Shown: positions 1,454-28,353, counted from the first letter of the whole stretch. The stretch: DNA of 63,739 bases, filler included, from Hyphochytrium catenoides (GCA_900088475.1; 6 parts of 6 records of this genome joined end to end with filler, not necessarily neighbours in it); one strand, 5' to 3'. Made by a program: numbers and translations. The notes: generated by a model not told the origin, from the letters alone.

Positions 1454-3560
1454 CCAAAATAGAAAGAATCAACATCATGCGGAGAGAAAAAACCCGACTC
1501 ACTGCTATTTCTTTACGGTGTATTAGGAAGCCGGCCTCTTCAGGCAACCCTAGCAATAAGATTAACTTATGGATTCGAAAGTTTCTCAATAAAACTTGTT
1601 TAAAACTTTATACTCTCACTCTCAATCTTATCTGGACGACGCTGCTGCTTCCGGTTCTTTTAGCCTGGTCTCACATCTGGACAGATTTTCAATGGTACAT
1701 CAAAAGTGCGTGTTCTCTCAAGGACCCTTGGCTCCTACCATGAGACATTTTATTACCCCTAATGGTAAATCCAGTTCTCTCACTGCTCGGCTATCAGGAG
1801 CTATCGGCACTCAGTGGTTTTATATTTCACTCACCAATTCGCCTTTAGAAAGAGAAGGCACTCTAGAGCCTGTCTTCATCGCCGACTCTCGCTCGTTGCT
1901 AAAAGGGCGGTGGTACTGTCATTGAGTCTCTTCTTAGAGGAAACGTCCTAGGGAGCAAGGTGAAGCTGCGACCTGGCCAGCCAAAGCGCAGCCGTGCTCT
2001 CTTGACGATTTAGCTTCGTAGTCTCACACCTCATCTACGTAGAGATGTTAACCTCTTTGTCTTTGTTCATTAAACTTCGGCAGGTTCGAAGGACCGCCAA
2101 GCGGCTTCTCTCTCACTATGGAATCCCTAACTCTAGAAGAAGATTGGGCGTACCAAGCTGCTATGACCATTGTTCCCGCTACTCTCTACTACTCACATGC
2201 TGGTGGTTTAGTTAGCTGGTGGTCGTCAGTCGGAGCCGCGGAACCTGTTGGAGACTGCGTGGTGTAGGGAGTCCAACTCTGGCCTATCCAATGAAGGTGA
2301 CCAATTTTATCTCTTCTCTCTAGCGATGATCCGGAACAACGCGCCGTGCTACCAAGACCTAGGATAAACCGATCTTCTAACCCTCAACGTACTCCCTCTC
2401 TGATAGATATGACGAGGACTTCACGGCAACCGCTCACTGCCAGCATGCAAGTCTTCACTTCGTGCTAGTTCACTGTCATACTGGCGTTAGGGAGGACCAT
2501 GAACGTTCAGAGCACAACATGCTCTAGGCCCTTCTATAGTCTGATACTGAGGTCCAACTGGGGTCAATGATAAGTGAAGCCGAATGGAACAATTAGCGGC
2601 TCAGAGGTGCTGAGGTCTTTGCTGAGGTCTTTACTGAGGCTTTGCTGAGTTCATGCAGTGGTACTCGTAGCGCTCTGGCTCTGTGAGGCATGATGTGACT
2701 GTGTGAGGATAACACCCACTTTCAACTTCGTCTATAGCTCTCTACGTTATCTCATTGTTTCCTCCTCCCTTCCGCAAGATAATCGTCTTGCAAGGGAAAG
2801 ACACTCGTTGCTGAAGACGTTGAAGAGCTATCTTGGGTTAACTCTGAACTGCCTGGAGTCGCTGGAAGCTGGTCTCCGTGGGAATGTGGATTTGCAGGGA
2901 CCATGTAGCAACTGCAAATGTTTGGTGCGTATCGCCGGATCCATCAACAGCGATGGAAGACCCACCTGCATGGAATGTACGTAAGCCTCCGGAAGTAAAG
3001 CTACTTAGTCTAGTCGGCAAAGCCCGTGCTGTGAAAATCAAGAGCTTCGTTCTGCGGAACGCCACTGCGAAATTCCAACCCTTGTCTTACGCAGCTGGGT
3101 GCTGCTCGGCCAGAGGTGATCTCTGGTGTCTTACGCCAAAGCGAGGCTATTCTCTCTAAGGACGCAGTCTTTAACGAGATCCATGCCCTCACCCCAGCTT
3201 ACCAGGAAGACTTGATTAAGAAGTTTGAGCTAGGTGTTGACGGTGGCCATACAAAGCTTCCATCAACGATATGGAGCTCTGTCTTCACCAGCACCGAACC
3301 TGCTTATTTTCGACAAAGTCACCACGACACTCTGTCCTCACTAGCTGACTAACTCCTATGAATCGGGTCATTAAAAAATAATGGATGCTGCGTCAAGAGT
3401 CATCAAATCATAAAGGGTGCCTTAAACTGCTGCTCTTGGGCCTGAGACTTGTGCCTGAAGGGGCGAATAATAATCATGGGTGACGAATAACAGTTAAGTC
3501 TAGCCGGACAGAGTTTGTACACTGCCTTACGATTGGAAAGAATTGTTGACCTCTGCTGTG

Positions 3561-6480
3561 CTAAAATTGAAACTCGTCAACATGAGCGATCACCGTAGTT
3601 GGGTCCGGCGGAGCTTTGAGATAGCCCCGGAAAGCGTCCTGGAGGGTGTGAGGCCCTGCTATGAAGAGATGCAGCGGCATATCGCCTGCATCTCCCTTCT
3701 TGGAATTGCCAGCAGCCAGTGGAGAGGTATCAAGACCGCCTTCGAGCAAATGTTTACGTTCGCTCAGAGCGGTGTCCATTAGTTCCTTCACCACAGGCCG
3801 CCGACCGCGACAAATAGGGAAGCGGCTCTCAATCTCTCGGTCCAGCCCACTTTCGCCATCTACCTGATGGATTGGTCCAGGGCGCCCCGTTGTCACCATC
3901 TCGACGTCCACACGCCCTGCTAGGCTGCTGTTGCCCGCATGGTGCAAAGCCTGGGTTGTCTGCCTTGCTGGGTTTACGGCCGGGCGCTGCTGCTTGTTTA
4001 GGGCCGTCACAGGAGAGCAGTAGTTACCTTCTTCCTGTAGTCACCTCCTTCCTGTAAAGGCAGGGGAGAGCTTCTCGACAACCATGTGCTTTTCTTCTCC
4101 CTTACCGCTGGCAAGAGACTTATCGCTGCGGCAGAGACAGCGACAGTTGAGATATTGCAGTATATCCCAGCGGTTAATGACCAGAAAAGTGAGCAGACCT
4201 CCCACCGCTAGGAAGAGCGTCGGCTCTGCAATGCGCACAACATACCACGGAACACGATCAGGGAGGAGAACTAGCTCAAACTGCTCATGGTTGTTGGGAT
4301 CTAGCCCGAGCTCTTCATACTTCTCCTTTCTGTACGTCGTGTTCACCGCACCGGTAAAATACCATAAGAGAAGCACCGAGAGCATTGCCACAGCCCACAC
4401 CACGACATGGAGGGCTACTTCATGCCAGCAGCCAAGGTGAATTGGTTTAAAAGCTCGGCGGGAGCGAGCTGAAGCCCCTAGAGCCCGCTTGTTGCGCTCA
4501 TGAGCTCTATCTTGGTTAGCATGCCGGCTCTTGAGCCTTCAAATCCCTTTCTTAGCGGCTTGTTAGGTTGTTCTTCCTCAGGTCTCCTCCTCCTCGAGGC
4601 GCTGGTACCCATCACATCCAAAATAACACTGCTCCTCTCAGCATCCTCCTCCTTATCATCATCTTGAGTCCCTCACGCTCCTTCGTGGTAAAGATCAGCT
4701 GCGGCGCCCTCTTTTGGCCTTGTGATGTAGAGATGGATCTGGATAACTTGCCCTGCGGTGGCGACAATCTCCTCTAGTTCTGGGAGAAATGGAGCAATGG
4801 CAACCTCTCCCTTACCACCCAATGAAACTCCACCCTTTTAGATGCTGAAGAAGTAGGATGGCGAAGATACTCTCGGTAGCACTCCTTCAGAATACTTAGT
4901 GCTGGGGTGACGCCTATGCCCCCCGTGAGCAATAACACACCCTCCTTCAGGTGATAGAACACTCTAGCGCCGTAATAGCCATCCACCTTCACCATAGGCA
5001 TTACTCCTCTGGAGCTTCTTATTATCCCTCTGCCAGCATTAGCCGCAGCAGGGGAGCATGGTGCCTCCTCTTCCTGTAAGCAACCTTTGATGAGCAAGGC
5101 CATATTGGCTGTCCGTGTGCCCAGGACCTTAGCGTGTACCGTAAAGCTGTGTGGGTCATCCGATTGATGGAGCTGAGCTGATACTGAAAGGATGGGATTG
5201 CACTTCAGAGATAGCTGGTACGCAGAGGAAGACATATTGGCCAGGATAAAATTGGTGCTTCAACTCTGGTGACCTTGCACTCCGCAGTGCAAACAGCCCC
5301 GCTTCGGGGTGCCATTGGACCTCTTGCACCTCGGCGTTAATAGCCATCGTCATCCCTGTTCGTACGCGGAAGATGATGTAAAGGAAGGCGGCGGGATAGA
5401 TAAACATGAGAACAGTCTCGAAGTGCAGGATGGAGGCATAAAAGGCCGCTATAAAGAGAAAATGCGAGTAGTAAAAGAGCTCAAAGTAGCGGCGCCGAAC
5501 AACTTCTAGAGAGGTCAGCCAGATGAAGGTGAAGAGAATGCCGGCGATAAGGCCCATAAAATTTGCCAACGTATCATTGCTGGTGACCAGAGAATATTTG
5601 AATCACACGGGAGCTCTGGCAGCGTTGGAGGCATCTCGCCGGCTGCCGTAGCAGCCTGAATACCGGCAGCAGCAATCAGATACTCAAACATGAAGGGATC
5701 CGAGATTTGCTTCGTCTTGCATGGCACTGCATTCTCCACCCACCCTCCCTCAATCCACCAGAGGACGAAGTAGAGAAGGCCGTGAATGTTGAAGCAACTG
5801 ATGGCAATACGACTAAGCCAACGATGGTATTTGATACATCTGTCAAAAGAGAGACCCAGCAACTTCATCCAAAAGGCACCTCGAGAGACAGGAAACAAGA
5901 GGAAGAAGAAGCTGCAGAGACCTGAGAGGCCAAAACCCAGGGCAAAGAGCTCAATCCAGAACTCCGTTCGAGTGTGCTCAGCCAGGAAATAGTCAGCATA
6001 ATACTCCGTAGAAACGAAGTGAAGGTAGGTGACAAGGTTGATGAGCGTCAAGAGCACCGTGAAGGATGAAAAGGAGCTCCCCAAGCGAGAACCAACGACC
6101 GTACCAGAACACCTGCGGACGTCCCAACCTGGTCCAAAGATTGGCAGCAACGTGCGAACGACGATCTCCGTCATTTTCTTGGAAATAGTGTAAGTAAAGC
6201 AGGCCCAGGAAGGTAAAAACTGCTGTGGGAAGAACAAGGCACAGAAAATGGCCTAGGTATCAAGCATAGGTGCTCATATAGAAGCCGTCGGCAGACGAGT
6301 ACTCCTCAAGATTATGCGAAAACTCATGCATGAAGTCGTTGAATGGCTTCACCAGGATGTGGCGTGGACTACTATAACGTAGAGGACACTAAGAACCATT
6401 CCACCTATGAGAAGATAGCCCACGTGGGTCCCCTTCTGCTCACCAGGATGAGCGTGAGAGAGCATCATGCAGACGAATGG
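3561..6480 (-). pseudogene. Ferric reductase (FRE/FRO, NOX superfamily), frameshifted
   Basis: Motifs occur in order across shifting frames. Heme histidines: KYHRWLSR, NIHG, FYYSHFLF, ILHF. FAD-binding: PGQYVFL, HPFSISS. NAD(P)H-binding: VDGYYG, LLTGGIGVTP, FHWVVRE, IHLYITR, GRP, FIAGP, terminal HVDEFQF*. Frame breaks near 5600, 5165 and 4785 are too short to be introns, and there are stops in the 5' part. The 5' boundary is approximate. Confidence 0.85.
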
Positions 6481-6877
6481 TAAGCCTCTGGCTGGGGGAA
6501 TCAACTGGCGCTTGACATTACTAGCCTGGGAGCTCTCCTTGCCGCCTAGCTAGGTCAAGCAGAAGGAGGCTCNNNNNCATCAAGCGATAATTGACTGTTC
6601 CTGCTGCGCCGAATAGGTGCAGTCAGCTGTGCCTCCCCTCTCCGTTGCCGCTGTGTCTAAGTCTGGGCAGGCAGCAGAGGCTGAGGCTGACCGAGCAAAT
6701 CTGAGACTGAGGCCCAAGGTCAGCCCCATCCTCTAACCGCGCCAGGAAAACCTAATATCCCTTCCCGGATATTCAACCCTGGCGGTGGGGCAGTCAACTC
6801 ATAATAGCGGCAGCAGAAGGTCTAGCCAGCATTTTCACGAGCCATCAACCAGGAAGGTGAGCAAATGAGGACCTAAA

Positions 6878-8518: not shown

Positions 8519-9583
8519 CTATGCAGTATAGGCAAAGAGAATGAGGCTTGAGGCCATCACCAGCATCCCTACAATTATTCCAAAGGGACACACAGACTTC
8601 GAACCATCTAAAGTGAATGCCGCTGGTAGCAGCTCTTGTATCACTACCATGGTCATGATACCGCTTACAATACCAAATAACCACCCAAACAAAGAATCGC
8701 TTATCGTTACACTCTCGCTCTGAGCAGAAAGCGCAGTCCATGCGATGAGGGCCCCGAGTGGTTCAGATAAAGCGGCGATTAGCGACCAGAGAAGCGCTTT
8801 CTTCTTGCTTCCCGAACTATAGTAAATTGGTACGGAGATGGCAAACCCCTCAGGTACGTTATGAATTGCAATGGCGAAAGCGATAGAGACTCCAATAGAA
8901 GCATCATCTATCGCCCCAACATAGGTAGCAAAACCTTCAGGAATATTATGAAGTCCAATGGCGGCTGCTGCTAGCACACCGACGCGTTTGATAGAGACAG
9001 AAGGTGGTGGTGGTAGGCTTTTCGCCGGCTGATGTGGTGTCGGGCTGGAAGTTATGTCACCGTAAGCTGTACCACTATTTGGAGAAGATTCATGAGAATG
9101 GAGTGCTGATGGGGAAGGAGATTGGGACTCGAAAGGTTCCATTCGGATGGTCTCGCCGAGCTCTATCTCTCCTTGGCGTTTTAGGACCTGATGAACGATC
9201 TTTTCAAGAAGTACTGTAACGATGATCCCTCCGGAAAACGCTAGGGTTGCGAAGAGTGTCGACGTTCCTAGAGAATAGCCGTGGGTCTTAAAATGCTCGG
9301 TCGAGAGATGCAGAATATCGAACAACGCCACAAACAGCATCACTCCACTAGCAACTGCTAAGGAAGCGGCGACGTATTTTTCCGATCCAGAGGAGTCGAC
9401 ATGCAGCTTCTTTTTGGCACAAAAAATGACAATTGAGCCCACCAAAGAGAAAGAGCCCGCCACAAAGGCCAGAGCAAACGCGACCCCAACGTTTGTAGCC
9501 TCGTCATCAACGCCCTGATGAGAAAAGGATGAAGCACGTAGTACACGTCTCACAATTCGTTGCTCGACGAGAAAATAGTGCAT
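8519..9583 (-). CDS. ZIP-family (ZupT-like) divalent metal transporter, intronless
   Basis: AIGLHNIPEG and AIAIHNVPEGFAISVPIYYSSGSKKKA signature helices, SEPLGA, QELLPAA, about 8 hydrophobic segments and a variable loop after TM3. First ATG at 9583; the ORF stays open to 9661. Confidence 0.93.
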   Translation of the reverse strand: MHYFLVEQRIVRRVLRASSFSHQGVDDEATNVGVAFALAFVAGSFSLVGSIVIFCAKKKLHVDSSGSEKYVAASLAVASGVMLFVALFDILHLSTEHFKTHGYSLGTSTLFATLAFSGGIIVTVLLEKIVHQVLKRQGEIELGETIRMEPFESQSPSPSALHSHESSPNSGTAYGDITSSPTPHQPAKSLPPPPSVSIKRVGVLAAAAIGLHNIPEGFATYVGAIDDASIGVSIAFAIAIHNVPEGFAISVPIYYSSGSKKKALLWSLIAALSEPLGALIAWTALSAQSESVTISDSLFGWLFGIVSGIMTMVVIQELLPAAFTLDGSKSVCPFGIIVGMLVMASSLILFAYTA

Positions 9584-10340
9584 TCCCCTCTTATGTAGTT
9601 GAAGAGACAGACAAGGGTACCACTTTTGAGCGATGAAGAGAAATCTGTGAACTAGCAACAAGGAAGAAAGTTCACTAGAGAACGTAGGCGGCCAAGTGTA
9701 AGTTCACACAGCCTGCTTCGTAAACCAGTAGAGCCCCAACACAAGCTAGGGGAACATTGTAGTTCCACAAAGGATCTTTTTTTGGGACAAAGATTAGTTC
9801 CCAAAAAGACGGGGAATGTTTCTCAATGAGAATGATTTATGACTGATGGCGTTAGATTTGGTCTAGGATGGGTAGGCTGAAGGCGTACAGGTCGTCGTAG
9901 TTGGGACTTTTTCTACTGAGAGTGTCCAGGATCAACTATGTTGCTCGCAAAACCAGTGACTCAGTTTGGTGAGCAGATGCCGCCCCTAAGACTGTTACTA
10001 TGGGGCGCACCGCTTGGGTGCTGTACAAGGAGCTAAAAGTATCAAAAAAAGTGCGCTTCCCACTGGGTGGTTTGATGAGATGGACAACCAGGAAGCAGAA
10101 ACACCAGAAGACCTCAAGATGGAAGCACCAAATGAATGTCCCCAAAATGTCAGAATCTAGCCTCCTANNNNNNNNNNNNNNNNNNNNNNNNNNNNNNNNN
10201 NNNNNNNNNNNNNNNNNNNNNNNNNNNNNNNGGACCACCTCGAGAAACTACCGATGTCATAACTATTATTGGAATGTTTTTACTATAAATGGGGTTCTGG
10301 AGATAGTACTACTCCGGTAGGCAGGCCTCCCATAAGTAAG

Positions 10341-13300
10341 GCCTGTAGTGGTCCCGAACCGTTCATATCTATAATCCACCTACCTTTAATATGTATTCTT
10401 CCTCCTTTGGCATGACACATTCTCGAATATGTTGACTATCCAAAGCTATGGGCAATGTAGCAGTAAACTTTCAAAGATTTGTTTCTAATTAGTATGGCTT
10501 TTTGCACTTCAGGACCACTTGCACGCAAATTGGAATGAAACTTATTCTAGATATCAATCCGAGCTCTTGAGCCTTCCCAACTCTAAGTTGCTGGTTACCT
10601 GTTATAGAACTACCTCATCGCCGCTGCTGTAGAATACGTGCAGGGCAGCAGTGATTGAGCGGGCGACAGAAGAAATGAAGAGGAAAAGCAAGAGGACCTG
10701 GTCATCATGATGATCGACGAGAAAGGCAAGAGATAGAGAGCTTGAAACAAAGGTGCCGCAGGTGGTGGTGAAGCCAGGAAGCTGGGCAGAGGCTTTTAAG
10801 GTGAAGCAGAGTGGCAGGAGGAGGTGCATAAAAGGTGAATTACCAAGTGTAGTTGAGAAAAAAAGAGGAACTTCTTTGCATCATTCTACCTCCTCCTCTC
10901 TTTTTTGTCGTCATCGGCCCTCATTCGTCTTTTCCTTCTCTGCTGGCCGTCGTACCTGTAATAGAAAATGGCTCCCCATAAGGGAAGACGTCAACGCTGC
11001 GGTAATTGTAAAGAGTTTGGCCACAATGCCCGTAAGTGCCGCAACCCTCCTTGGCAAGATACGAGGCGCAGAGAGCTACAGGAGGAAAGAAGAAGGCGAT
11101 TAGATGCTGATAGTGACGATGGACGAATGGATGATGGAGCTTTTATGCGTGAAGAAGAAGAGGAGGAAGAGTATCTTGCAGCACGTAGTGGTGAAGAGGA
11201 AGGAAGGGACCGGAACGCGAGCAGCTCTTATTCTTCTGACGAGGGAATAGAAGGAGTACGGCCGAGAAGGGACCATCATGAGGGCGGCAGAGGAGTTGGA
11301 GAAGACAGGAGGGCTCGGCAACAACAAGAACAAAGGAAGGAATGCTGCTGTTCCTCCTGTTCCTCCATATGCCCGCGTTCGGCTTCACGAAGTTCCTCCC
11401 GAGGAAGAAGAGATCCTTATAGACGAAGTTGATATATGGATTAGCAGCGGAGAATAATGGCGGAGAAGAAGGAGTAAGGAGGTATGTCTATATAAAGTTC
11501 TTTCTACTCTCTCGCATCATATCATATCTTGTCTCTTGCGCTCTGTAGGGCTCATACACCTGAGGTGGAAGGACAAGCTCCAGAGAATCTTGAAGCTGAG
11601 CGGCAAGGCGGCAGGGAGGGTGGCAGAGCGCCGGTACAGCAGCCAATCGAACCAAGGGATGATCTACCACCGCAAAGAGATGGTGAGGCTAGTCCACAGA
11701 AAGAGTGGATTAACTTTGTCATCAAAGAGCAAATAGCCAAGATCGATGTGCGCGCAAACTTACGTCAACGTAGAAGAGCTGCCCTATCCATAATGAATTC
11801 AAAGGGAGAGCTGTACTGGATTCATCCTACTCATCCGCTTGCATCGCCCAATATTTCCACGGATCCTTTGGACGTTGACTACTATTGTCGACGACCGATA
11901 TTTTTCTGGAACCCGGAGGATGTTCATAATGAGGATCTTCCAGAAGGTGTGCCACCGTGCCCTCAGTGTCGATCAAGGGCACGAGTGACTCATGAAGGAC
12001 TCAACCCAAAAGTAGGTGCCAGCATACTGACCTCATATTGTTTCAAGTTAAAGGTTGCGTTGTTTTTATTGTTCTTCATACTTATATTCCTCTCCATAAC
12101 AAATACTTTAGGGGCCCCGCAAGGTTTATGGTGAGCACGATTGGTACTATCTTCTGTGCAGAAGGTTCAAATGTGGCGCCTGTAAAAGGACATTCAACAG
12201 TTATGATCAAGATGTGCTGGATCAACTGCCAGCAGCCCACATCAAAAGGGACTTTCCTGCTATTCTCACGAAGAGATCTGGCCTTGATTTGAGAGTCGTG
12301 AGAGATATGAGGTTTTTGGCCTCTAGTGCATCTTCTGGCGCAGCGGAGACAATGCATAAACTATTGCTCGATCGGTACAAGAACCGATGGATCCGGCTAA
12401 TGGCACTTTGGGCTAGTAAGGTAGCGGCTGTCCGTGACCACGACCGCCAGCATTTGCTTGGACAGCGGGATCTTGCAGCAGACCCGAAGCGGTGGTTGGA
12501 GGACTGGACTAACGCGAATCAATACAGCGGTGGTGTTCCTACTGCTCATTATCTAGCAGATATGCTCAAGATGGACCTTCTAAAGCGAGAGCCCTGGCAG
12601 CAACGGACTCAGCAAAAATGGTCAGCCCAGGTAAGACTAACAAATGAACCTACGGGTGCATGCCTTACTGAAATAGAAACATTCTATTAACCTTTGCTGA
12701 TACACCTTCCGTCGTCCAATAGATTCTGAAGGCCGATGGGAACTTCAAAATACCAAAGAAGCTGCATTTAGAGGGAGATAGGGTTGGGGAGGAGCTAACA
12801 ACGTTCTTCAATGAGAAGGGGCAAGTGCTAAATCAGCTATTTACTCCGGCTAGAGCGAACCAAGACACACTTCAACCTATTCTCGAGGGCCTTAAAGAGC
12901 GCTTCAAGGGTAATGGTGGTCCATCGCCTGAGCTAGTTTTTAGAGATAACTGCTGCAGGTTCGTCAGACGAGGCTCGTTAACCATACTTTTCCAAATGTG
13001 AGGGGTATGTAATCTAAAGTGAGCTTCTTTTCGGCGCTTTGCCACTTCTGCTTGGTTGCAGGGATGGCAAGCTGTATAATGAGGTGTTCTTCAAGCCTAA
13101 TGATGAGGAAGGAGGCCCAGCCCTAGAAGATGTACTTCCACCACGACGATTAAGAAGTCTAGCCCTTCCTGAAGGTGTTGCTCCTCGTACCATCTCTGGT
13201 CGACTTGACCTTATAGAGGTCTGTAACTCACTTAATGCTAAGGCCGCTCAGCAACTTCTATATGTTGGCGTGGCCGTTCAGCACGAGGTTGTCTTCATCG

Positions 13301-16300
13301 GCGACCGCCGCCCAATTAAGGTGCTGCAGCTGGCCTACCATACTGGTCACCTGAACCGAGCCCCCGGTGCGAAAGCGTATGAAATTATTCTTATCAACCT
13401 CACTTCGCCAGAGTTTGGAGGCCGGTTCCCCAACATAATAGTCCGGTCTATCTTAGAGAACAAGAATATCATCAAGGTGGCAATCGGCGCTGAACAATTG
13501 GCCAGGATGATCTCAGTAGACTTCAAGGTCTTCTCCAGTTCATGGCTGGATGTAGCCCAGCTGGCAAGGCGTCGTGGCGTCATAGACTCTGTTGGATTGA
13601 CCTCTAAGGAGTTATGTGAGACATTATTAGGGTGCACCTATGACGTCCCACTTCCGATCGCCTACGGTTCCTGGGACCAATGGCCCTTGACTAGCAACCA
13701 ACAGAAGTTTGCGGCTCTAAACGCTTTCTTGCCTTTGATGGTCTACCTTAAGCTTAAGGAACGACGTCTAAGGAATTTCCAGCCCCCTCCTGCTGTTGCT
13801 GCTGGCCCAGTAGACGAAGGTGTTGTGCCTGTCACGAGAGCTGTCTTCTTAATGGATCTGACAGGAGTGCATAACATTGCCAAAGGAATAATAATCGATG
13901 ACGGTGATATTGGGGAACAAGAAGTTTTCAAGCCTAACGCGGCACAGCTACGCTGTCTAGCTCCTCACCTTAAGCAGATGGCGCGTGTAAAAGTTACTCT
14001 CTGTATGATGCCACGAGCCCTTGCGCCCTTGTTATACCACTCTGTAGGGCGCATTAGCGTGGAGGAGGCTAGACAGAGTGAGTTCATTCTGAACTGGCCC
14101 ATATCTTGCATGAAAGTGCCAGACACGAATCCAGATGGTTCTGCCACAGTGGAAGTGCCTTCAGCGCAAGGAAGACCGCTGAACACCCCATCTCAGCAGG
14201 GACAGGCAACTACAGGTCCAGGAGGGGCAATTGGTCAGGCGGCAGCAGAGGAAGAGCAACAACTTGTGATGGATTTTGAAAGAGATGTGGCGGAGCTCAT
14301 TCGGTCGTCACTCAACGTTAGCGCCGACCCGCAGGAGCAACTTTCTTTAGAGGACATTCTTCTTGGAAGAGAACCGGCCCCCGCTGCTGAAGAAGATGCT
14401 CGTAACGACAATGGCCCCACTAACTACTCACACAGAGCGGATGATCAGCCGCCGAGGGATGAGGAAGCTCAGAGAAATAGAAGGGACTGGTTAAAAAAGC
14501 TATTGAGAGTCAAGCTGGATATTTATCATGCCATTGACCGAATACGCCGCTGTCTGACAACTAAACATGGAGCTTTGCGCTGTTTCCTGGCATGCCTACG
14601 AGAGGCAATCTTCTTCACCTCTAAGGATGATATGGAGCTGGTGAAGGAGGTGCTACGCCGTGACGGTTTGCCCAACGAGGAGATTGAATTAAAGCTTAGG
14701 AGTGACTTCCCTTTCTTTATGAAGAGAGTGAGACGCGTGGTTCCCCCTCCAGCGGAGCTTTACAGGAGACTTGATGTAGTTGGGAAAATGTTTGCCAACA
14801 TTATCGACGATGCGACGGGAAAGCCTCTGTTTGACAGGGAAGCTGTTAGAGCTTTTGACAATCTCAAAGTCCACGCCAGCCTGGGGTGTCTTTCTGATGT
14901 CCCGGGAATCCCTTTGTACATTGAGCTTGGAAAAGACTCTCGTGGGATCCCCATATATCGTTGCTGCCGTGGAACTAGCGATATAGAGGGCTATCACAAG
15001 CACCTCAAGCTCCTTCTTCAAGGCTCATATTACTCTCCGGAGCTGCTTTTTCTTGTTCTTCGGGAGATAAACGGACACTGGAATGTGAATGTCGCTATTC
15101 GTTGCAGCAGCTTAGCAGAAATATATGGGGGCTTCTCAGAACTACCATTGGTTGAAGAAATCCAGCTTGTGACCATGGGCTTCTACAAGGATCATCCTAT
15201 GTTCAAAGACTGGATGGGTACCTTTCTTGTCGCAGAAACCGGCGAAAATATGAGCTTCTTGGCACCTATTGAGGACAATCCGGGAGAGGATAATGAGCTA
15301 GACCCCGCATCACAACCTAGTAACGGCCCAGCCCCAACACCAGACCCAGAGGACCAGCCAAATGACGACGGCATTTCATCCTCATCCAGTGAGACGGACA
15401 CTACTGCATCCGAAAGAGACTCACTACCTGGCACCGAAAGACTGCTTTTCCCTTCTGTGCGATCCCAGCCTTCGTGTGTCATTAGAGGCCATGAGACAAA
15501 TATAGCTCTTCCGGTTAGAACGGCGGATGAACAGAAAAAGTTCAAGGGTGCCATTAACCAGGGTGAGTATATCCTAGTTGACCGCAAAGGAAATCTGATC
15601 CTAAAGTCTGCGGAGCTGTCTCTTTGGTGGAACTCTACGGTGACGGCGGATCGGCAGAATGCCCTAGCCATTCACTACAAGACTCCAAGCCTCTTGGAAA
15701 AGTACTTCAAGTCCGTACTAAGCCAGCATAATCGAATGGCGACACTAGCAGGCACTGATGCACCTACTGTAGCTCGCACTGCCCTGAACCGCGCCAATCA
15801 AGTACTACGAGATGCAGAGTTGGCCCCGGAGACAACCGTGGGGAGTAATGTGGCTTCTACAACTACAGCGCATCGTCTTTTATGCCCTCAGCAGGGTAGG
15901 CCCCCTTCGTTAGATAATCTTCCTCCTCCCGTTCCTGTTGTTGATCTGCCTGCCAGTGGTCGAGGCACAGAAGGGCTTCAAAACGCGCAGGAATTCTATC
16001 GCTACGTTATGGGGCAGCAGGTTCGTGGCTCACCCCAAAGCACTGTAGAAGCAAGGGACGCGGCGCCGAGAAGAGTTGCCGGAGCGGCATTTGGGACTCG
16101 GGGTACTTCCTCGGGAGGACCAGTAGTGAGGAAGCGGACTCGGAAGCTGCCACAAAAATGTGCAACGTGCGGTCATTATATGTTCCTGGGGGAATGGAAA
16201 GCCTATCATAATATGAAGAGAAAGCGAGGAGAACAAGGATTGTTCTGTAAGGTACCCGCAGAGCTCCGACGGGCCCTGACCGAGGCTGAAAAAGCAAGGT

Positions 16301-17401
16301 GGGGAAAGACTCCGAGCACCGCAAGGCCCAAGGAGAACCTGCCATGTCCATGCCAGACCTGTAAGGACCTTATAGCACTGTGGCTCAGCAAGCAGAACGT
16401 ATCCCAGCCCTCTGACTCCCTCCCTCCTCATTCAGCAGCTTGAACAACCCCTATTGCTTCTCTCTGTTCATTAAGTTGATTGATGCGGAGCTGATCACTC
16501 TCACTTCTTCATCATTTGCCCTAAACCTGCAAGATTCTTAACCATGTTAAGGAGCCCTCTTCTTCTTTAATATCTTAGCAGCAGGAGGGTGGTTGTCTGC
16601 CTTTCTAGAGATAGGGACTGTTGGTCTCTATCTCTGCTTGTAGCTTAGACCTTGTTTGCATGCCCATGGCACCTCCTGCTCTACAGCTACACTGCGCTTT
16701 TCTTGCATGTCACCACCTTCCTAACGGAGGCTGCAACGAATAATTAAGGAGCCAACACGGTCTCTTGTCGCTCGGAAAATGAGCAACATCTATCTAGATT
16801 GCTTTTAGTGCAAAAATGCTGCCTTTCCGGCTTCGCCTAATAGGAGGATGATAGACTTGCTTGTTCAACATTATTGTTGTCACTATCTCTTATGCCTTAT
16901 TAATTATTATCTTCTCGTCAGCAGCCTGGTTCATTGCACACTTGTCTCTGTCTCTGATCTAAGCAGTGATCTTCTGACCTTTAATGTGTCTCATTATCAA
17001 CAATGGCCTTCAATCAAGAAAGAACTTAGGAGTGTCCCCTAATAAGATTGAGATATTATCCATTCATCGAGGTCACCACCACCACCATCATCGTGTAGTA
17101 GGTGAATAATAATGCGGCATCGACAATAATCTATGGGATGGCCTTCCTCGTGAGTTGGCGCCTGATTGTTGTTCCCACCATAACTACATTAAATCTCATC
17201 GGAAGTTGGCAGGCCCTGTAATATGCCCATCTGTCCTCTTGTTGCCCACATAAGAAGAACGCCCCTCAAAAAAATAATCTGAAACCTACCTTACGGATGG
17301 AGTCACAGGGGCTGTTCTTTTCGACCCTTTCCTGGTGATTACTGTATCGATTATCATGCCGGTCCAGAATCTGAACGCCTGTAGTGGTGCCTGTAGTGGT
17401 C
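10341..17401 (+). mobile_element. Dada-like DDE DNA transposon (~7.06 kb), candidate ends marked by direct repeats
   Basis: Contains the spliced transposase listed below. GCCTGTAGTGGTC at 10341-10353 and 17389-17401, with an extra GCCTGTAGTGGT at 17377-17388. No convincing TIR. The boundaries are inferred. Confidence 0.65.
10968..16443 (+). CDS. Dada-like DDE transposase with zinc fingers and an inserted DEDDy exonuclease-like domain
   Basis: Phase-consistent GT-AG exons 11549-12011, 12112-12630, 12723-12958 and 13062-16443 (~1530 codons). N-terminal CCHC knuckle (CGNCKEFGHNARKC) and DUF6729-like region (FFWNPE..CPQC..GPRKVY..CGAC..LDQLP..FPAILT). D1 is KADGNFK (12735), D2 is RDNCC (12945), DxxH is LDIYH (14518), E is TSDIEGYH (14986). 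C-terminal Cys cluster CATC...CPCQTC. Exon 1 (10968-11481) needs either an extra intron (candidate 11257-11421) or frameshifts to join in frame. Confidence 0.85.
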
Positions 17402-18254
17402 GACTCGAGTCGTTTCGAGAACAAATAACAAAAGTTGATGGTAATTAGGAATACATTGGATTCGAGACATTAGCCCTATTCATCTTCATCATTTTTCATC
17501 TGATAGTTCTTGGACAAATTGTGTCATCAAGAGCACGCTATCAGCCAGGACAGTCGCTGCCTTCATGTGCTCCACAAAAAAGACAGAGTAGAACTAGTAG
17601 TAGTAGGATGGCTCTTTAGAATGGCCTGGTGTTGACTTTAGAAAGAAATCAACCATCTGCAGAACTCTAAATAATGATGAAATCTCTACTAGATCTCCAT
17701 AAATAATGCGCAATAATAATCCGAAGGGATAGTGGTGATCAACCGGAGGAGCTTCAAACAAAGAGAAGAGAAGAGCGATAATGACGGATAAGACGCAGAA
17801 CAATTAAAGACGCTTCACCATTGCTCTTTGAGCTTTTTTCCTTCTACTGCTACCTTCTTTTTGCATACTTTATCTCTTCCTCCGAAACATCAACAGCCAC
17901 CTTACCTATGGTAGGTGAGCCGAAGTGGCCGGTACGACATATTACTATGACTCCAAATGTTTTGGAATAAAAATTACCGCAAACTACCGCGAGCTGCCTC
18001 AAGCTTACCGCAAACGATGAAGCTTGGCTTGACTTATTACAGGAGTGCGGGGCATCTTGAACCGGTAAGTTGGCTAAACTTTTGACAAATCTACCTAGGG
18101 GCCGGCCCACACTGTAGACTGTAGACGCTCAGCTTGCTTTAGGACTCTACCTAGTGACCCAGCCACAACCAGATTGTTATTATCCCACAACCCCTCAGAT
18201 TGTCCCACAACCCCTCCACGATCCTTTAGAGTAAGAACGCTTCCGCCGCCTACC

Positions 18255-20210
18255 TATGGCTTCAGATGACTACTCTACATACTATTGATCTATTGACAGA
18301 GATTGTCTGGGTATGCAACGATGAAGGTCAGGACGTATTGTTGCTTTAACTCCGCCTGGTATGAGTTCACAGGAAGCACAGAGAGCGAGTCTCTTGGGGA
18401 TGGATGGCTTAGCTTCTTGCATGAAGATGACCGCGACCGGGCTGTCATGCAGTGGTGCTACGCTTTTAGGACCAAAACCCGCAATGACATCAAGTACCGG
18501 TTTCGGCGACACGATGGCGTCTACCGTTGGTACATTGGACGCGCTAATGCAATGCTATATCGTCGGTGGGTTGGGTCATGCACAGATTTAGGCGATGCTA
18601 TGACGCCAGCAACGGAGCTTGAAGTTCAGAAAGAGCTTCTTACAACTACGCTAAAACAGATCGCCGCTGCAGTACAATTACAGAAGCACCATCAGGTCGG
18701 CTCGTTTTCGCCAATGGCAAGATGGGACAGGTATGGGGATTGCAGATAAAGCCATCTCAGAACATTGATGACTGTGAGGACTGGGATGCTTTCCATCCTG
18801 ATTCACAGCGATACTCCAAACAGGATTGGCCGCTAGCACGTTGACATTGATGACTGTGTGCTAAATGGGAAACGGCTGTCAACGAGGTCACTGAGACTAT
18901 GTAAGGTGATGGTACGAGGTCAACCATTTCCTTATCTCAGCACCTGTGCAGAACGGTGAAGCTCTGGACGAGACGCCAACACTACAAAAAGAAAGGTTAG
19001 AAAACCATGAGTGAAGCCAAGACGGCATTTGAAGCGTCTCCCATCGAGTCCAACTTCATAGCCAACATGAGTCATGAACTGCGTACACCCATCAATTGTA
19101 TCATTGGAGCGAGCAGTCTTCTAGAAACGACATGTGCTGCCTTGCCAAGTGACCAAAGAGTGAATGTGGAGGTCATAATGGACAGTGCCCGCACCTTAGA
19201 GGAGCTGGTCACTGATCTCTTAGACCTTTCAAGGCTTGAAGAGGAGCTTCTTGAGCTAGCTGGACAACAACAATTTTTGTCCCACTGAACTGTTATGTAC
19301 TGTTCTTGCTCGTGCAGAAAGGAGAGTCCGCAAAAAAGAACAGAGGCAACTGACAATCAACCATACAGTCTCCGACTCGCATGTCTGTGTTAAAGGGGAC
19401 GGCCAGAGGGTACAGCGGATACTACTCAACCTACTCTCTAACGCTATAAAGTTTACTCCGGACGGAAAAAGCATTAATGTAACTCTATCATCACGAGAAT
19501 ATCCGACGAAGAGCCCCCACTTCGTAATGTTAGACTTCTCTGTACATTATAATGGTATTGGTATCGATCAGGAGGCACAGACTAGGCTGTTTGAGCCCTT
19601 CATGCCAAGCGGATAGCAGCACAACCAGAAACTATGGCGGGTCAGGTCTTGGCTTACCACTATGCAAGAAGCTATTAGATTTGATGGGCGGTGATATGAC
19701 TATAATCTCGTCACCTGCGAAGGGGTCAACGTTCTCAATCCATATCCCGCTAAAGCGAGTAGCAGATGCTGAAGTCAGTCAAATGGAGAATCAACGGTGG
19801 AGGTATTTCTCTGACATAGCTGTCGGTAGTCGTCGCTCGTACTTAACAGCTGAAGAGCGAGCCAAGAAGAGAATCCTGATCGTGGAAGACAACAAGCTAA
19901 GCGCCACGACCCATGAAGCTACTATCCACAAATGGGTATAGCTACGTAGACTGGGCACTGGACGGTTCTGTGGCATTGGAAGTTAAAGCATAGCAAGTAT
20001 GACCTGGTCCTTATGGATTGTCAGATGCCGGTAATGGACGGTTTCGAGGCCACACGCATTATTCTCCGCAAGGCTTGTATGGATTGTGGCATGGATGGCA
20101 TCATACTGAAGCCATTCAACGTTAACCACCTTGTCAAGATTCTGGATGCGATGCTAAGGTCAAAAGAGGCTAAGTGGAAATATCTATTTAGGGGGTTAGA
20201 GATCACGTAG
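18255..20210 (+). pseudogene. PAS-PAS hybrid sensor histidine kinase (HisKA-HATPase-REC), decayed and intronless
   Basis: PAS/PAC (GWLSFLHEDDR, YRFRRHDGVYRW), H-box FIANMSHELRTP, N-box QRILLNLLSNAIKFT, G-boxes QADSSTTRNYGGSGLGL and KGSTF, receiver ILIVEDN / [16 protein letters not shown] / LKP. Spread over several frames with stops. Confidence 0.9.
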
Positions 20211-23116: not shown

Positions 23117-24106
23117 ATGAGGCTCTTACGAGCCCTAACGTACTCGTTCGCCGTGGGGCAGACACTGATGACTTACTCTTGCTTGGGGTCCTTGCTTGTC
23201 AGTGACCTTAGGCTGAAGCTGGCAAGTCAGAGCAGTGCGTCTGATCTTCTAATGCGTTCTTTCACATTCCCACCTTCTGCCGATGGACTCAATGCCACGA
23301 TCGTGACGACATCAATGCTTCTAAACGCGTCGGCGTCCAACCAGAGTCTTTGGAAGCTGAAGACTGAAGCTGGAGGTTATCGGAATGGAGCTCCTACATT
23401 CACTGGCAGCTGGAGAGCTGCTGAGACAACCCTAGCAGAAGACACTGCGACCGACTCAGCACCAATCCCTCATGCTCCTCAGCCATCTTCAGCACTTTCT
23501 GTCAACCTCACGATTGATGGAAAGGTGGGCAACGGCTCTGAACCTGTGGCCAGCGATGTGCCCAACGGCCGCCTCTTCTACTTTAGAAACCAATGTCCTC
23601 TCAGTGTGGAGCTCATCATCGCTTATTATCCAGTCTACTCCACGAGCTCTTTGGCTGTGGATGGTCCCTGGCTCTTTGGACCCCTGGAGAACCACGAACA
23701 ATACCTCGCTAGCGATGGCAGACCCGTAGAGGCCAACTATGGGAAGTATGGGGCGTACTTCTGCGCTCTGTCTACCAATGGAGAAGGTGGCTGGACCGGT
23801 CCGTATGATATCCGCGTTGGTGGGACAGACATCGTGCTGCCCATGGACATCATTTATCCCAGCAGCTCCTCCGGGAACTATCATATAAGCCTGCTGTGCC
23901 CTGGTATCGCACCTCCAACAGTGCTGCCTACGCCAAGCCCCACACCTTCTCCCACGCCAAGACTGAATCCTCCTCCAGCACCATCACCAGCCACGGGGCC
24001 TGTTAGCCTAGGCACTGCTGGGAGTACCTCCCTTGCGTGTATCTTAGCGTCCGTCCCATGGGCGCTGCTTGTTCTTCTGTCTCTAGCTTGGGCTATAGTC
24101 GCGTAG
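23117..24106 (+). CDS. Putative secreted, GPI- or membrane-anchored surface protein with a DUF1036-like domain and a Pro/Thr stalk
   Basis: Single 329-aa ORF. Hydrophobic N-terminus, several N-x-S/T sequons, a globular segment FRNQC..VELIIAYY..DGPW..YFCA..GWTG, a PTPSPTPSPTP linker and a hydrophobic C-terminal tail ending at the stop. Confidence 0.75.
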   Translation: MRLLRALTYSFAVGQTLMTYSCLGSLLVSDLRLKLASQSSASDLLMRSFTFPPSADGLNATIVTTSMLLNASASNQSLWKLKTEAGGYRNGAPTFTGSWRAAETTLAEDTATDSAPIPHAPQPSSALSVNLTIDGKVGNGSEPVASDVPNGRLFYFRNQCPLSVELIIAYYPVYSTSSLAVDGPWLFGPLENHEQYLASDGRPVEANYGKYGAYFCALSTNGEGGWTGPYDIRVGGTDIVLPMDIIYPSSSSGNYHISLLCPGIAPPTVLPTPSPTPSPTPRLNPPPAPSPATGPVSLGTAGSTSLACILASVPWALLVLLSLAWAIVA

Positions 24107-25469: not shown

Positions 25470-26971
25470 TCACCGGCTAGGAGGAGGCGGAGGAGGTACT
25501 GGTTGTCCGGTGCCTGATGTTGAGCGCTTCAGGTTCGTGGGGGTGCTCACACTCATGGCTGAAGGATCCGCAATCTTTGTAGAGAAAAAGAAGTAACAGA
25601 GAAGTGAAGTGAGGATAAAGGCAGGGGATAGACTAGGCCAGCAATGGCAAGAGGACAGCAGTAGAATTGCCGGTGGAGAGACACTGTCGGTCAGGACACC
25701 GGAGTTGGCGCTTTGGGCACCTAGCAGACAACAGTCCCCTAGACCTCCCTAGAGATGCAGCCGAGAGATCAGCAGGTCGAGAGTCCTTCCTCGGACGAGC
25801 AGATGAGAAGGCTATCCTTACCCACTGATCAGGGTTACTGGGATCCTGAGTCCACCTTATCTTGCTGATGTTATCCTCCTTGAACACCATCGTAAAGCTG
25901 GTGACAGTAAGAACAAAGAGTCAGACGAGGAAAGAGAGAGCGACAGGGAAGAGAGGACGCTAGAGGAGGAGAAGGGGCAGTAGGCCCTCCAGGTTTTTCC
26001 TAGCGGGAGACAGAATCTAAGAATAGATGGAAGGAAAGGACATAAAGATAAACGTACTCTCCAATTTTCTCAACCCGGCCCTTGCGATTGAGAGCCAGGC
26101 TCATGCAGTTACGATGGACCGTGCAGTAGCTGTTGAGGCGAATAAAGAGAGTCTCAAGACGTTGGCAGGCGTGCGTGTGGCAGAGAGGCAGGAGGCGGAG
26201 AGAGAGTAGAGACTCAATGCTGAGCAAGGACAAGATAACGCTAAAGGGTTAGGGTTAGCAGTAGAGAAAGAAAGCGCCTCTTTCCATGTTCTACTAGGAA
26301 GAGGAACGAGGCAGATGTTTTCTTACGCATCCTTTATCTTGATGATGTCCCCGGGAGAGATCTCCTTGCCAAAGATGTCATACGCGGTGAAGTTGATGGC
26401 GGCGCTCTCATCCGCCACCAGGAGATTGTACATCACGTGGTTATCCTTCACCGGTTGTGGTTCGCCTGGCAAGCGACAGGCAGATGATCGAAGACGAGGA
26501 AGTAAGCTGAGGGCTTCAGAAGAGAAGAAGAAAGGAAGGCAGCACGGCAGAGCTACTAAATAAGGAGGAAACAATAAGGAAGATGTTGCTCAGTCAGCAG
26601 GTAAAAGGGCTGCATCTGTCCAGGAGATGTGGGCAAGCCCAAGAATTGGAAGAGGAGCCGTGGTAGATCACGAGGCAAGAGTTCATCAAACCTGGCTGTT
26701 GTCAGAAGAGGGAGGGAGAGAGAGAGAGAGTCTAACGACAGGGTACTGAGAAGAGTTACCGCCTTAGCTGTGAGGAGAGAGACCTACTTTTGTCCAGTAC
26801 CATCGCTTTGACAAAGACGCTCTTACACGAAGGGTTGAGATCTTTTACTCGGATATAGTGCTGCACAGCTGAGGAGAGTACCGGGGCGGGAGGGTGAGAG
26901 CCGCTCTGATGCTGTCTATGGTGGTGCTGATGATGGTGTGGCGACGACGACGTGGGAGTATCTTCACTCAT
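25470..26971 (-). CDS. SOSS complex subunit B / NABP-like OB-fold ssDNA-binding protein
   Basis: Five phase-consistent exons: 26971-26788, 26465-26327, 26129-26058, 25897-25822, 25574-25470. They give VKDLNP..VLDK..VADESAAINFTAYD..ISPGDIIKI..AY..KGRVEKIGDFTMVFKE, which parallels the NABP/hSSB1 consensus, followed by a Pro-rich tail. Confidence 0.9.

Positions 26972-28314: not shown

Positions 28315-28353
<39 letters not shown>

What the first reader, a model, noticed from the sequence alone, without database searches (positions are those of the whole stretch)
13150..13770. Transposase-embedded WRN-type exonuclease with all five catalytic positions substituted
Seen: between D2 and the DxxH motif lies a domain that aligns by eye with the WRN DEDDy exonuclease. 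VGVAVQH corresponds to VGFDMEW (D>A, E>Q). ILENKNIIKVAIGAEQL corresponds to LLENKAVKKAGVGIEGD (D>L). SWDQWPLTSNQQKFAALNAF corresponds to [20 protein letters not shown] (Y>F, D>N). The scaffold residues, the reading frame and the transposase DDE triad are all intact. Known, from memory: some Dada transposases carry a DEDDy exonuclease at this position with the catalytic residues retained. Inference: loss of exactly the catalytic set suggests a pseudo-nuclease kept as a nucleic-acid end-binding or target-selection module. This is the best candidate for an undescribed variant in the window.
Basis: partly seen in the sequence, partly recalled or inferred. Interest (0 to 1): 0.82.

Follow-up and report, generated by a model that had tools for sequence, protein, structure and literature searches.

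The report
Dead exonuclease domain inside Dada transposase
A fungal Dada-type transposase gene carries a WRN-like 3'-5' exonuclease domain that keeps its fold but has lost all five catalytic residues, while the transposase's own catalytic residues are intact; the same loss has arisen at least twice in related fungal transposons.

Summary
Window 13147-13767 encodes a WRN/EXD2-type DEDDy fold: phmmer gives EXD2 4.7e-8 and WRN 1e-5, the family profile matches WRN at 4.8e-52, and the AF2 model (pLDDT 87) aligns to mouse WRN exo at Z 25.9, 1.6 A. All five catalytic columns are replaced (A71, Q73, L146, F216, N220). They read DEDYD in 55 complete exonuclease domains among the top 150 database hits.

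The domain is nested in a multi-exon Dada transposase. D1, D2, DxxH, E, the CCCC finger and the CCHC finger are all present, and 25 of 25 conserved core columns match.

Three more lineages in this genome share the loss of the E and of the third D. They form one clade whose sister keeps DEDDy. A second dead clade (Marasmius, Mycena) arose independently (AU p 9e-6). There the dead domain shows pN 0.26 against saturated pS 0.79, and one element has two 97-99% identical copies, each with its own 7-bp target duplication.

The pseudo-nuclease reading is therefore supported. End-binding or target selection is untested. In the window's lineage the domain evolves about 2-4 times faster, relative to the N-terminal exon, than in its relatives. 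I rate this a new variant of a known kind, of moderate interest.

The parts
10968..11432 (+). Possible first coding exon. ATG ORF starting MAPHKGRRQRCGNCKEFGHNARKC (a CX2CX4HX4C zinc knuckle), followed by an acidic and Arg-rich tail. Its link to the transposase gene is not shown.
   Evidence: by eye. No Pfam hit. No RNA data.
11691..12014 (+). Transposase exon (approximate bounds) with the first half of the N-terminal CCCC zinc finger (CPQC). Weak DUF6729 match.
   Evidence: tblastn against paralogues; Pfam PF20499 E 0.021; sequence.
12112..12630 (+). Transposase exon with the second half of the CCCC finger (CRRFKCGAC) and a DUF6729-like region. It ends at a GT donor at 12631.
12723..12958 (+). 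Transposase exon carrying catalytic D1 (ILKADGNFK, codon 12735-12737) and D2 (FRDNCC, codon 12945-12947). The flanking introns 12631-12722 and 12959-13061 are GT..AG.
13062..16443 (+). Last exon, about 1127 codons up to the stop. It holds the exo-like domain, a linker, DxxH, E and the C-terminal CCHC finger.
13147..13767 (+). WRN-type DEDDy-fold domain (model residues 29-235) with no catalytic residue left: A at 13273-75, Q at 13279-81, L at 13498-500, F at 13708-10, N at 13720-22.
14518..14529 (+). DxxH motif (DIYH) of the transposase.
   Evidence: Both columns are 100% conserved in 36 aligned cores; coordinates.
14986..14988 (+). Catalytic E of the DDE triad, within RGTSDIEGYH.
   Evidence: The column is 100% conserved; coordinates.
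16156..16250 (+). [quoted passage not shown]
   Evidence: The pattern follows PMC3706591.

Best explanation
The window holds a single-copy, intron-bearing gene for a Dada-superfamily DDE transposase from a fungus, probably an agaric. A WRN-like 3'-5' exonuclease domain is nested in its catalytic region, between the second D and the DxxH motif.

In the ancestor of a small clade of Dada lineages in this genome, the exonuclease lost its metal-binding carboxylates, at least the ExoI Glu and the ExoII Asp. The rest of the catalytic set then decayed lineage by lineage, and the window's copy has lost all five. The domain can no longer hold the two-metal site of DEDD nucleases, so it is a pseudo-nuclease.

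It persists as a folded module because it sits inside the transposase catalytic domain. Its most likely role is non-catalytic: structural or spacing, or possibly oligomerisation or nucleic-acid contact.

Shown: fold, substitutions, nesting, intact DDE/DxxH, clade-wide and recurrent loss, purifying selection on a parallel dead domain, and recent transposition of a parallel dead-exo element.

Inferred: that exonuclease catalysis is dispensable for this branch of Dada, and that the domain's remaining role is structural or binding.
For: Fold and homology.

All five catalytic columns are replaced. The same columns are the five most conserved (98-100%) in 49 intact relatives. They read DEDYD in 55 complete domains among the top 150 database hits. 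The 32 N-terminally truncated domains keep every catalytic column they cover.

The transposase is intact. D1 and D2 are present. The window matches the consensus at 25 of 25 core columns conserved at 85% or more, including DxxH and E. Both zinc fingers are present.

The catalytic patterns in the clade are: window AQLFN, C1563 TKHAD, C4255 --HYD, and C272 DKL in the first three columns. C272's last two columns are unreliable because the copy runs off its contig there. These four form one clade in the exo tree (SH-aLRT 98). The three of them that hold the N-terminal exon also group in a tree of that exon, which contains no exo columns: 95 for window with C1563 and 85 with C272 added. Their sister is the intact-exo pair C236 + C949 from the same genome. 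C1563 also keeps D1, D2, DCLH and RGTSDLEGYH.

Constraint within the clade:
- A clade-specific conserved motif, LGC(S/T)YxVPxE(I/V), replaces the intact family's LxxxLpKdxxiR.
- C1563 and C4255 are 56-62% identical in the exo domain and 56% in the core.
- The exo to N-terminal branch-length ratio in dead C1563 and C272 (1.2, 1.1) is no higher than in intact C236 and C949 (2.3, 1.2).

An independent second dead clade:
- It comprises Marasmius P0146 (AKAYE), Marasmius P0111 (--VYE) and Mycena P0157 (DQS--), with intact cores.
- The AU test rejects a single origin with the window (p 8.7e-6).
- Between the two Marasmius elements, exo pN is 0.255 against saturated pS 0.79. For comparison, core pN is 0.153 and linker pN is 0.329.
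- The Mycena element has two copies, 97-99% identical, on different contigs, with 7-bp target duplications GTTCTGA and CCCGTTC.
Against: - The window lineage's exo branch is long: 1.44 against 0.35 for its N-terminal exon, a ratio of 4.2.
- The window has lost further conserved non-catalytic residues.
- pN between the window and C1563 is 0.53 in the exo domain, against 0.33-0.40 elsewhere. Constraint on this particular copy may therefore be weak.
- No close orthologue exists, so no dN/dS is possible for the window itself.
- AF2 confidence partly reflects the family alignment rather than this one sequence.
- I could not obtain model coordinates, so I did not measure whether E75 or E144 of the model could reach the former metal site.
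- There is no expression evidence.
- The element's ends and target site are undefined.
Confidence: 0.7

Rival explanations
1. Neutral relic. After inactivation the domain has no function of its own. It survives only because frameshifts, stops or grossly misfolding changes inside the transposase catalytic region are selected against, and in the window's lineage it is drifting towards a linker.
For: - The window's exo branch is 4.2 times its N-terminal branch, against 1.1-2.3 in relatives.
- Extra conserved residues are lost.
- pN is 0.53 against C1563.
- An open frame is uninformative because DxxH and E lie downstream in the same exon.
Against: - The single sequence still hits EXD2 at 4.7e-8.
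- 15 of the next 25 most conserved columns are identical to the consensus.
- The clade has its own conserved motif.
- The other dead lineages show no acceleration.
- The parallel dead clade has pN 0.255, below the linker's 0.329 and far below saturated pS.
Confidence: 0.2
2. Exonuclease activity is still needed for transposition but is supplied in trans, either by the co-resident Dada lineages with intact DEDDy (C236, C949, C1406) or by host nucleases. The dead-exo elements would then be partly dependent on them.
For: Intact-exo Dada lineages coexist in the same genome and are the sister group of the dead clade.
Against: - C949 carries in-frame stops. C1406 is known only from a 1.25-kb contig.
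- Nothing shows hetero-oligomers.
- I did not check whether the Mycena and Marasmius genomes hold an intact partner.
Confidence: 0.12
3. Domesticated host gene. The locus is no longer a transposon but a single-copy gene derived from a Dada transposase and recruited for a cellular function.
For: - It is single-copy at the DNA level.
- It lies among ordinary genes: a ZIP transporter and a ferric reductase.
- No termini, TIRs or small-RNA target were found.
- It has a long intact ORF with all conserved residues.
Against: - No orthologue above about 42% identity exists among 1.84 billion cluster representatives.
- Sister lineages in the same genome are fragmentary or broken, as expected of transposons.
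- Published Dada elements lack TIRs anyway (PMC3706591).
Confidence: 0.1
4. The domain is still a nuclease that uses a non-canonical residue set.
For: The window has H74, E75 and E144 close in sequence to the former motifs.
Against: [quoted passage not shown]
- All four carboxylates and the Tyr are gone.
- EXD1, with a comparable loss, is inactive in vitro (PMC4712191).
Confidence: 0.03

Closest known systems
Dada transposons with a DEDDy exonuclease domain (Dada-1_LB and Dada-2_LB of Laccaria bicolor, Dada-1_ES of Ectocarpus; Kojima and Jurka 2013, PMC3706591)
   Same: The architecture matches: CCCC finger, D1, D2, exonuclease domain between D2 and DxxH, E, CCHC finger, and introns. The fungal host also matches.
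   Different: The published elements keep all four DEDD residues (Fig. S1). Here all five DEDDy positions are replaced, and the loss defines a clade. No small-RNA target gene was found at the window or at the Mycena copies.
WRN exonuclease domain (PDB 2FBT, 2FBX, 2E6L) and EXD2 (6K17)
   Same: Same fold (Z 24.5-25.9, rmsd 1.6-2.2 A, full-length alignment) and recognisable sequence homology.
   Different: The equivalents of D82, E84, D143, Y212 and D216 are A, Q, L, F and N. The domain is embedded in a transposase rather than attached to a RecQ helicase.
EXD1 (PDB 5FIS, 5FIQ; Yang et al. 2016, PMC4712191) and the Egalitarian exonuclease-like domain (9RW0 and related entries)
   Same: DEDD-fold domains that lack the catalytic residues, are inactive as nucleases and are kept as RNA-binding or adaptor modules. 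Both appear among the structural matches at Z 17.7-18.6.
   Different: They are independent host proteins of animals, not nested in a transposase. No binding or dimerisation was tested for the window's domain.

Membership tests
Dada superfamily of DDE transposases | Catalytic DDE triad | tested here: met
   D1 in ILKADGNFK (12735), D2 in FRDNCC (12945) and E in RGTSDIEGYH (14986). The E column is 100% conserved across the 36 aligned cores; D1 and D2 align to KADG and DNCC/DKCC in all four own-genome paralogues compared.
Dada superfamily of DDE transposases | DxxH motif after the second D | tested here: met
   DIYH at 14518-14529. Both columns are invariant.
Dada superfamily of DDE transposases | N-terminal CCCC and C-terminal CCHC zinc fingers | tested here: met
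   CPQC...CRRFKCGAC across exons 11691-12014 and 12112-12630, and CATC...H...C from 16156. The pattern follows PMC3706591. This was a sequence pattern match only.
Dada superfamily of DDE transposases | Insertion into multicopy small RNA genes with a short (6-7 bp) target-site duplication | tested here: inconclusive
   There is no tRNA or Rfam hit in the window, or within 9600-18500 at E up to 1, and the termini were not found. A related dead-exo element in Mycena does have 7-bp duplications, but no RNA gene was detected there either.
DEDDy (DnaQ-like, WRN-type) 3'-5' exonucleases | DnaQ/RNase H-like exonuclease fold | tested here: met
   Z 25.9, rmsd 1.6 A, 186 of 186 residues against 2e6l. 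Foldseek E 8e-14.
DEDDy (DnaQ-like, WRN-type) 3'-5' exonucleases | ExoI D-x-E carboxylates | tested here: not met
   A-V-Q at 13273-13281, lying on strand residues 66-74 of the model.
DEDDy (DnaQ-like, WRN-type) 3'-5' exonucleases | ExoII Asp | tested here: not met
   Leu at 13498-13500.
DEDDy (DnaQ-like, WRN-type) 3'-5' exonucleases | ExoIII Y-x3-D | tested here: not met
   F-A-A-L-N at 13708-13722.
Non-catalytic DEDD-fold pseudo-nucleases (EXD1 or Egalitarian type) | Fold retained, catalytic residues absent, domain under purifying selection | tested here: inconclusive
   Fold and loss are shown. Selection is shown for the parallel Marasmius clade (pN 0.255 against pS 0.79) and supported for the sister lineages. 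It could not be measured for the window's own copy.
Non-catalytic DEDD-fold pseudo-nucleases (EXD1 or Egalitarian type) | Nucleic-acid binding and/or dimerisation without cleavage | not testable with these tools
   This needs EMSA, AUC and nuclease assays.

The most novel reading that the evidence does not exclude
In exonuclease-bearing Dada transposases, the nested WRN-like domain has a second, non-catalytic job that matters more than nuclease activity. Examples would be holding the cleaved 3' end or a flap, assembling the transpososome, or docking a host factor. Catalysis can then be lost repeatedly (at least twice, probably three times) while the domain stays under selection and the elements stay mobile. 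This would be a transposon-borne analogue of EXD1.
Probability: 0.3. Interest if true: 0.6.

Novelty: new variant of a known kind. Interest (0 to 1): 0.45.

Why it matters
The full-text search turned up no experimental work on Dada transposition. The role of the embedded exonuclease is only a published guess, that it trims 3' ends (PMC3706591).

Natural lineages in which every catalytic residue is gone, while the DDE core is conserved and at least one related element has inserted at two sites recently, suggest that exonuclease chemistry is dispensable for this branch. They also give ready-made 'catalytic-dead' controls for any future transposition assay.

The finding adds a transposon-encoded example to the short list of DEDD-fold pseudo-nucleases. 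It is not a new kind of system.

Tried and rejected
- Word-index protein search on residues 1-500 of the ORF found nothing.
- dN/dS for the closest own-genome pair (C1563 and C4255) failed because dS is saturated. The same holds for window against C1563, where only pN and pS are reported.
- Public runs gave no RNA holder. Two runs (one a soil metagenome, one without organism label) each gave two 151-nt contigs, all but one identical to the window, so no orthologue and no expression evidence came from them.
- Searches for termini, TIRs or a target RNA gene around the window gene found nothing credible. The 18-nt direct repeat at 10338 and 17374 did not extend on alignment. The Mycena terminal motifs are absent from the window.
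- The genome is probably not Laccaria bicolor. The published Dada-1_LB and Dada-2_LB exo motifs differ from this genome's intact copies.
- A conserved 'post-exo' module at 13840-14190 was only weakly similar to paralogues (E 0.12) and was dropped.
- The spliced protein was never joined. Exons were searched and aligned separately by reference, and trees used single exons only.
Full report
WHAT IS THERE

The window is contig C2358 of a 61-Mb eukaryotic assembly in 4759 contigs. On the + strand lies a multi-exon gene whose last exon is a 1134-codon ORF, 13039-16443. I placed the upstream exons by tblastn with paralogous copies from the same genome and by reading the GT..AG borders.

The exons are about 11691-12014, then 12112-12630, then 12723-12958, then 13062-16443. 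The introns are 12631-12722 and 12959-13061.

IS IT A DADA TRANSPOSASE?

All the protein features that Kojima and Jurka list for Dada (PMC3706591) are present:
- D1 in ILKADGNFK (12735) and D2 in FRDNCC (12945).
- DxxH as DIYH (14518-14529).
- E in RGTSDIEGYH (14986).
- An N-terminal CCCC finger and a C-terminal CCHC finger.

Across 36 aligned cores of the closest database proteins, the window matches the consensus at 25 of 25 columns conserved at 85% or more. Pfam sees only weak DUF6729.

The one feature not found is the target. There is no tRNA or Rfam family in the window, or near the gene even at E up to 1, and no termini. The gene is single-copy at the DNA level. It lies next to a ZIP transporter gene and a ferric-reductase gene.

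THE EXONUCLEASE-LIKE DOMAIN

The evidence for homology and fold is:
- The single sequence hits EXD2 (4.7e-8) and WRN exonuclease (1e-5, 9e-5) in the PDB.
- A profile of 55 Dada exonuclease domains (A1) hits WRN exo at 4.8e-52.
- The AF2 model is confident over residues 30-235 (pLDDT 87.4, pTM 0.82).
- The model superposes on mouse WRN exo at Z 25.9, rmsd 1.6 A, over all 186 residues. Foldseek gives E 8e-14.

The five DEDDy columns are the five most conserved columns in 49 intact relatives, at 98-100%. In the window they read A71, Q73, L146, F216 and N220. These sit on the expected elements of the model: strand 66-74, the start of helix 143-154, and helix 211-233. Of the next 25 most conserved columns, the window keeps 15.

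The loss is not confined to the catalytic set. W74, G140, L181, a conserved Lys, and the Arg aligned with WRN R196 are also changed.

HOW UNUSUAL IS IT?

An exhaustive phmmer search of 1.84 billion cluster representatives gave 1689 hits. None exceeded about 42% identity, and all matched through the transposase core. The window's lineage therefore has no close relative in public protein sets.

Among the top 150 hits, every protein with enough N-terminal sequence carries the exonuclease domain (88 of 150). Of these, 55 complete domains read DEDYD, and 32 truncated ones keep every catalytic column they cover. The nearest outside relative by core similarity, P0002, lies on a metagenome contig whose upstream ORF has an intact DIEW...GD...YACLD domain.

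A DEAD CLADE IN THIS GENOME

The genome holds several old, low-copy Dada lineages.
- Three keep DEDDy: C236, C949 and C1406.
- C1563 reads TKHAD, C4255 reads --HYD, and C272 reads DKL in the first three columns. C272's last two columns are unreliable because the copy runs off its contig end there.
- The window reads AQLFN.

These four dead copies form one clade in the exo-domain tree (SH-aLRT 98). The three that hold the N-terminal exon also group in a tree of that exon, which contains no exo columns: 95 for window with C1563, and 85 with C272 added. The intact C236 + C949 pair is their sister.

The simplest history is one inactivation, losing the ExoI Glu and the ExoII Asp, followed by piecemeal loss of the other positions. 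C1563 also keeps D1, D2, DCLH and RGTSDLEGYH. The transposase therefore stayed under selection long after the exonuclease died: the two lineages are only 43-55% identical in the transposase.

IS THE DEAD DOMAIN CONSTRAINED?

An open frame says nothing here, because DxxH and E lie downstream in the same exon. The missense-level evidence is as follows.

a. The dead clade has its own conserved motif, LGC(S/T)YxVPxE(I/V), where intact relatives have LxxxLpKdxxiR.

b. C1563 and C4255 are as similar in the exo domain (56-62%) as in the core (56%).

c. On a fixed five-taxon topology, the ratio of exo branch length to N-terminal branch length is 1.2 (C1563) and 1.1 (C272) in dead lineages, against 2.3 (C236) and 1.2 (C949) in intact ones. 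It is 4.2 in the window's lineage.

d. Between the window and C1563, pS is saturated and pN is 0.53 in exo, against 0.33-0.40 elsewhere.

The domain is thus clearly constrained in the clade as a whole, but relaxed in the window's own branch. No dN/dS is possible for the window, because there are no close relatives and dS is saturated.

A SECOND, INDEPENDENT DEAD CLADE

In the core tree, Marasmius crinis-equi P0146 (AKAYE), M. oreades P0111 (--VYE) and Mycena citricolor P0148/P0157 (DQS--) form a clade with 99 support. It lies across a 98-supported split from the window. An AU test rejects a single clade of window + P0146 + P0111 + P0055 (p 8.7e-6). P0055 (NRQIA, from metagenomes) may be a third case. 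All of these keep DxxH, E and the other core residues.

Between the two Marasmius elements, synonymous sites are saturated (pS 0.79) and pN varies by region:

| Region | pN |
| --- | --- |
| Zn-finger / D1-D2 | 0.115 |
| Core | 0.153 |
| Dead exo domain | 0.255 |
| N-terminus | 0.317 |
| Linker | 0.329 |

This is purifying selection on a dead exonuclease domain.

In Mycena citricolor the element (L050:7798-14090, 6.3 kb) has a second copy on another contig. The copies are 97.4-98.8% identical, have sharp shared ends, and carry different 7-bp target duplications, GTTCTGA and CCCGTTC. That indicates recent transposition. Whether the element's own transposase did it is not shown.

MECHANISM

Shown: the domain cannot form the canonical two-metal site, it is nested in an otherwise intact transposase, the loss is old and recurrent, and dead domains remain under selection.

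Inferred: exonuclease chemistry is dispensable in these lineages, and the domain is kept for a non-catalytic reason. I favour a structural or assembly role imposed by its nested position. Nucleic-acid binding of the EXD1 or Egalitarian kind (PMC4712191; Z 17.7-18.6) is possible but untested. The clade-wide loss of the conserved Lys and Arg does not favour simple retention of the old substrate site.

The rivals are listed with odds: neutral relic, trans-complementation by the intact-exo lineages of the same genome, domesticated gene, and non-canonical nuclease.

NOVELTY

Dada elements with an exonuclease domain are published, and all four DEDD residues are stated to be conserved in them. I found no paper on DUF6729 or on inactive exonuclease domains in Dada. 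Pseudo-nucleases of this fold are known elsewhere. This is a new variant of a known kind. It is moderately interesting, mainly as a natural catalytic-dead series for an unstudied transposase.

LIMITS

- There is no RNA evidence.
- The element's ends are unknown.
- The active-site geometry was not measured.
- Trees used the quick search, and several branches are long.

Noticed in passing
window 10968-11432 (+): ATG ORF beginning with a CX2CX4HX4C zinc knuckle (CGNCKEFGHNARKC), followed by an acidic and Arg-rich tail. It lies just upstream of the transposase exons and may be the gene's first exon.
   Followed up: no
L050:7798-14090 and L051:1924-12016 (Mycena citricolor GCA_963692855.1): Two copies of a 6.3-kb dead-exo Dada element, 97.4-98.8% identical, with ends TGGCTCATTGATTATATC... 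and ...CATGGGCCATGGGCC. The 7-bp target duplications are GTTCTGA and CCCGTTC. No tRNA or Rfam gene lies at either site.
   Followed up: yes
L051:4176-7966: A 3.8-kb insertion with roughly 29-bp terminal inverted repeats (ACCTCAGTTACCACCGCC...) and a 9-bp duplication CATTGATGC. It interrupts the second Mycena copy exactly in the ExoI-motif coding region. It is another, unrelated TIR transposon.
   Followed up: partly
P0001 (3352 aa, database protein): One predicted protein holds three tandem exonuclease domains (residues 684-864, 1779-1959, 2890-3070), all DEDYD. It is probably three tandem Dada copies fused by gene prediction.
   Followed up: no
P0055 cluster (7 members, about 5.5-kb metagenome contigs): Intron-free 1435-aa Dada-like proteins with NRQIA at the catalytic columns and an intact core. 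This is possibly a third independent dead-exo lineage, and its host is unknown.
   Followed up: partly
G000:C949 (L006, L015, L029, L039): This intact-DEDDy paralogue has in-frame stops in the D1-D2 and core regions, so it is a decaying copy even though its exo motifs are perfect.
   Followed up: partly
window 8519-9661 (-) and 4774-6237 (-): The upstream neighbours are ordinary host genes: a ZIP zinc transporter (PF02535, 6e-36) and ferric-reductase pieces (PF01794, PF08030).
   Followed up: partly
window 6573-6577 and 10168-10231: Assembly gaps (runs of N). The second lies about 740 bp upstream of the putative first exon and could hide the element's 5' end.
   Followed up: no
window 23117-24106 (+), 26756-27934 (-), 28082-28942 (+): ORFs of 170-329 aa with no Pfam match.
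   Followed up: no
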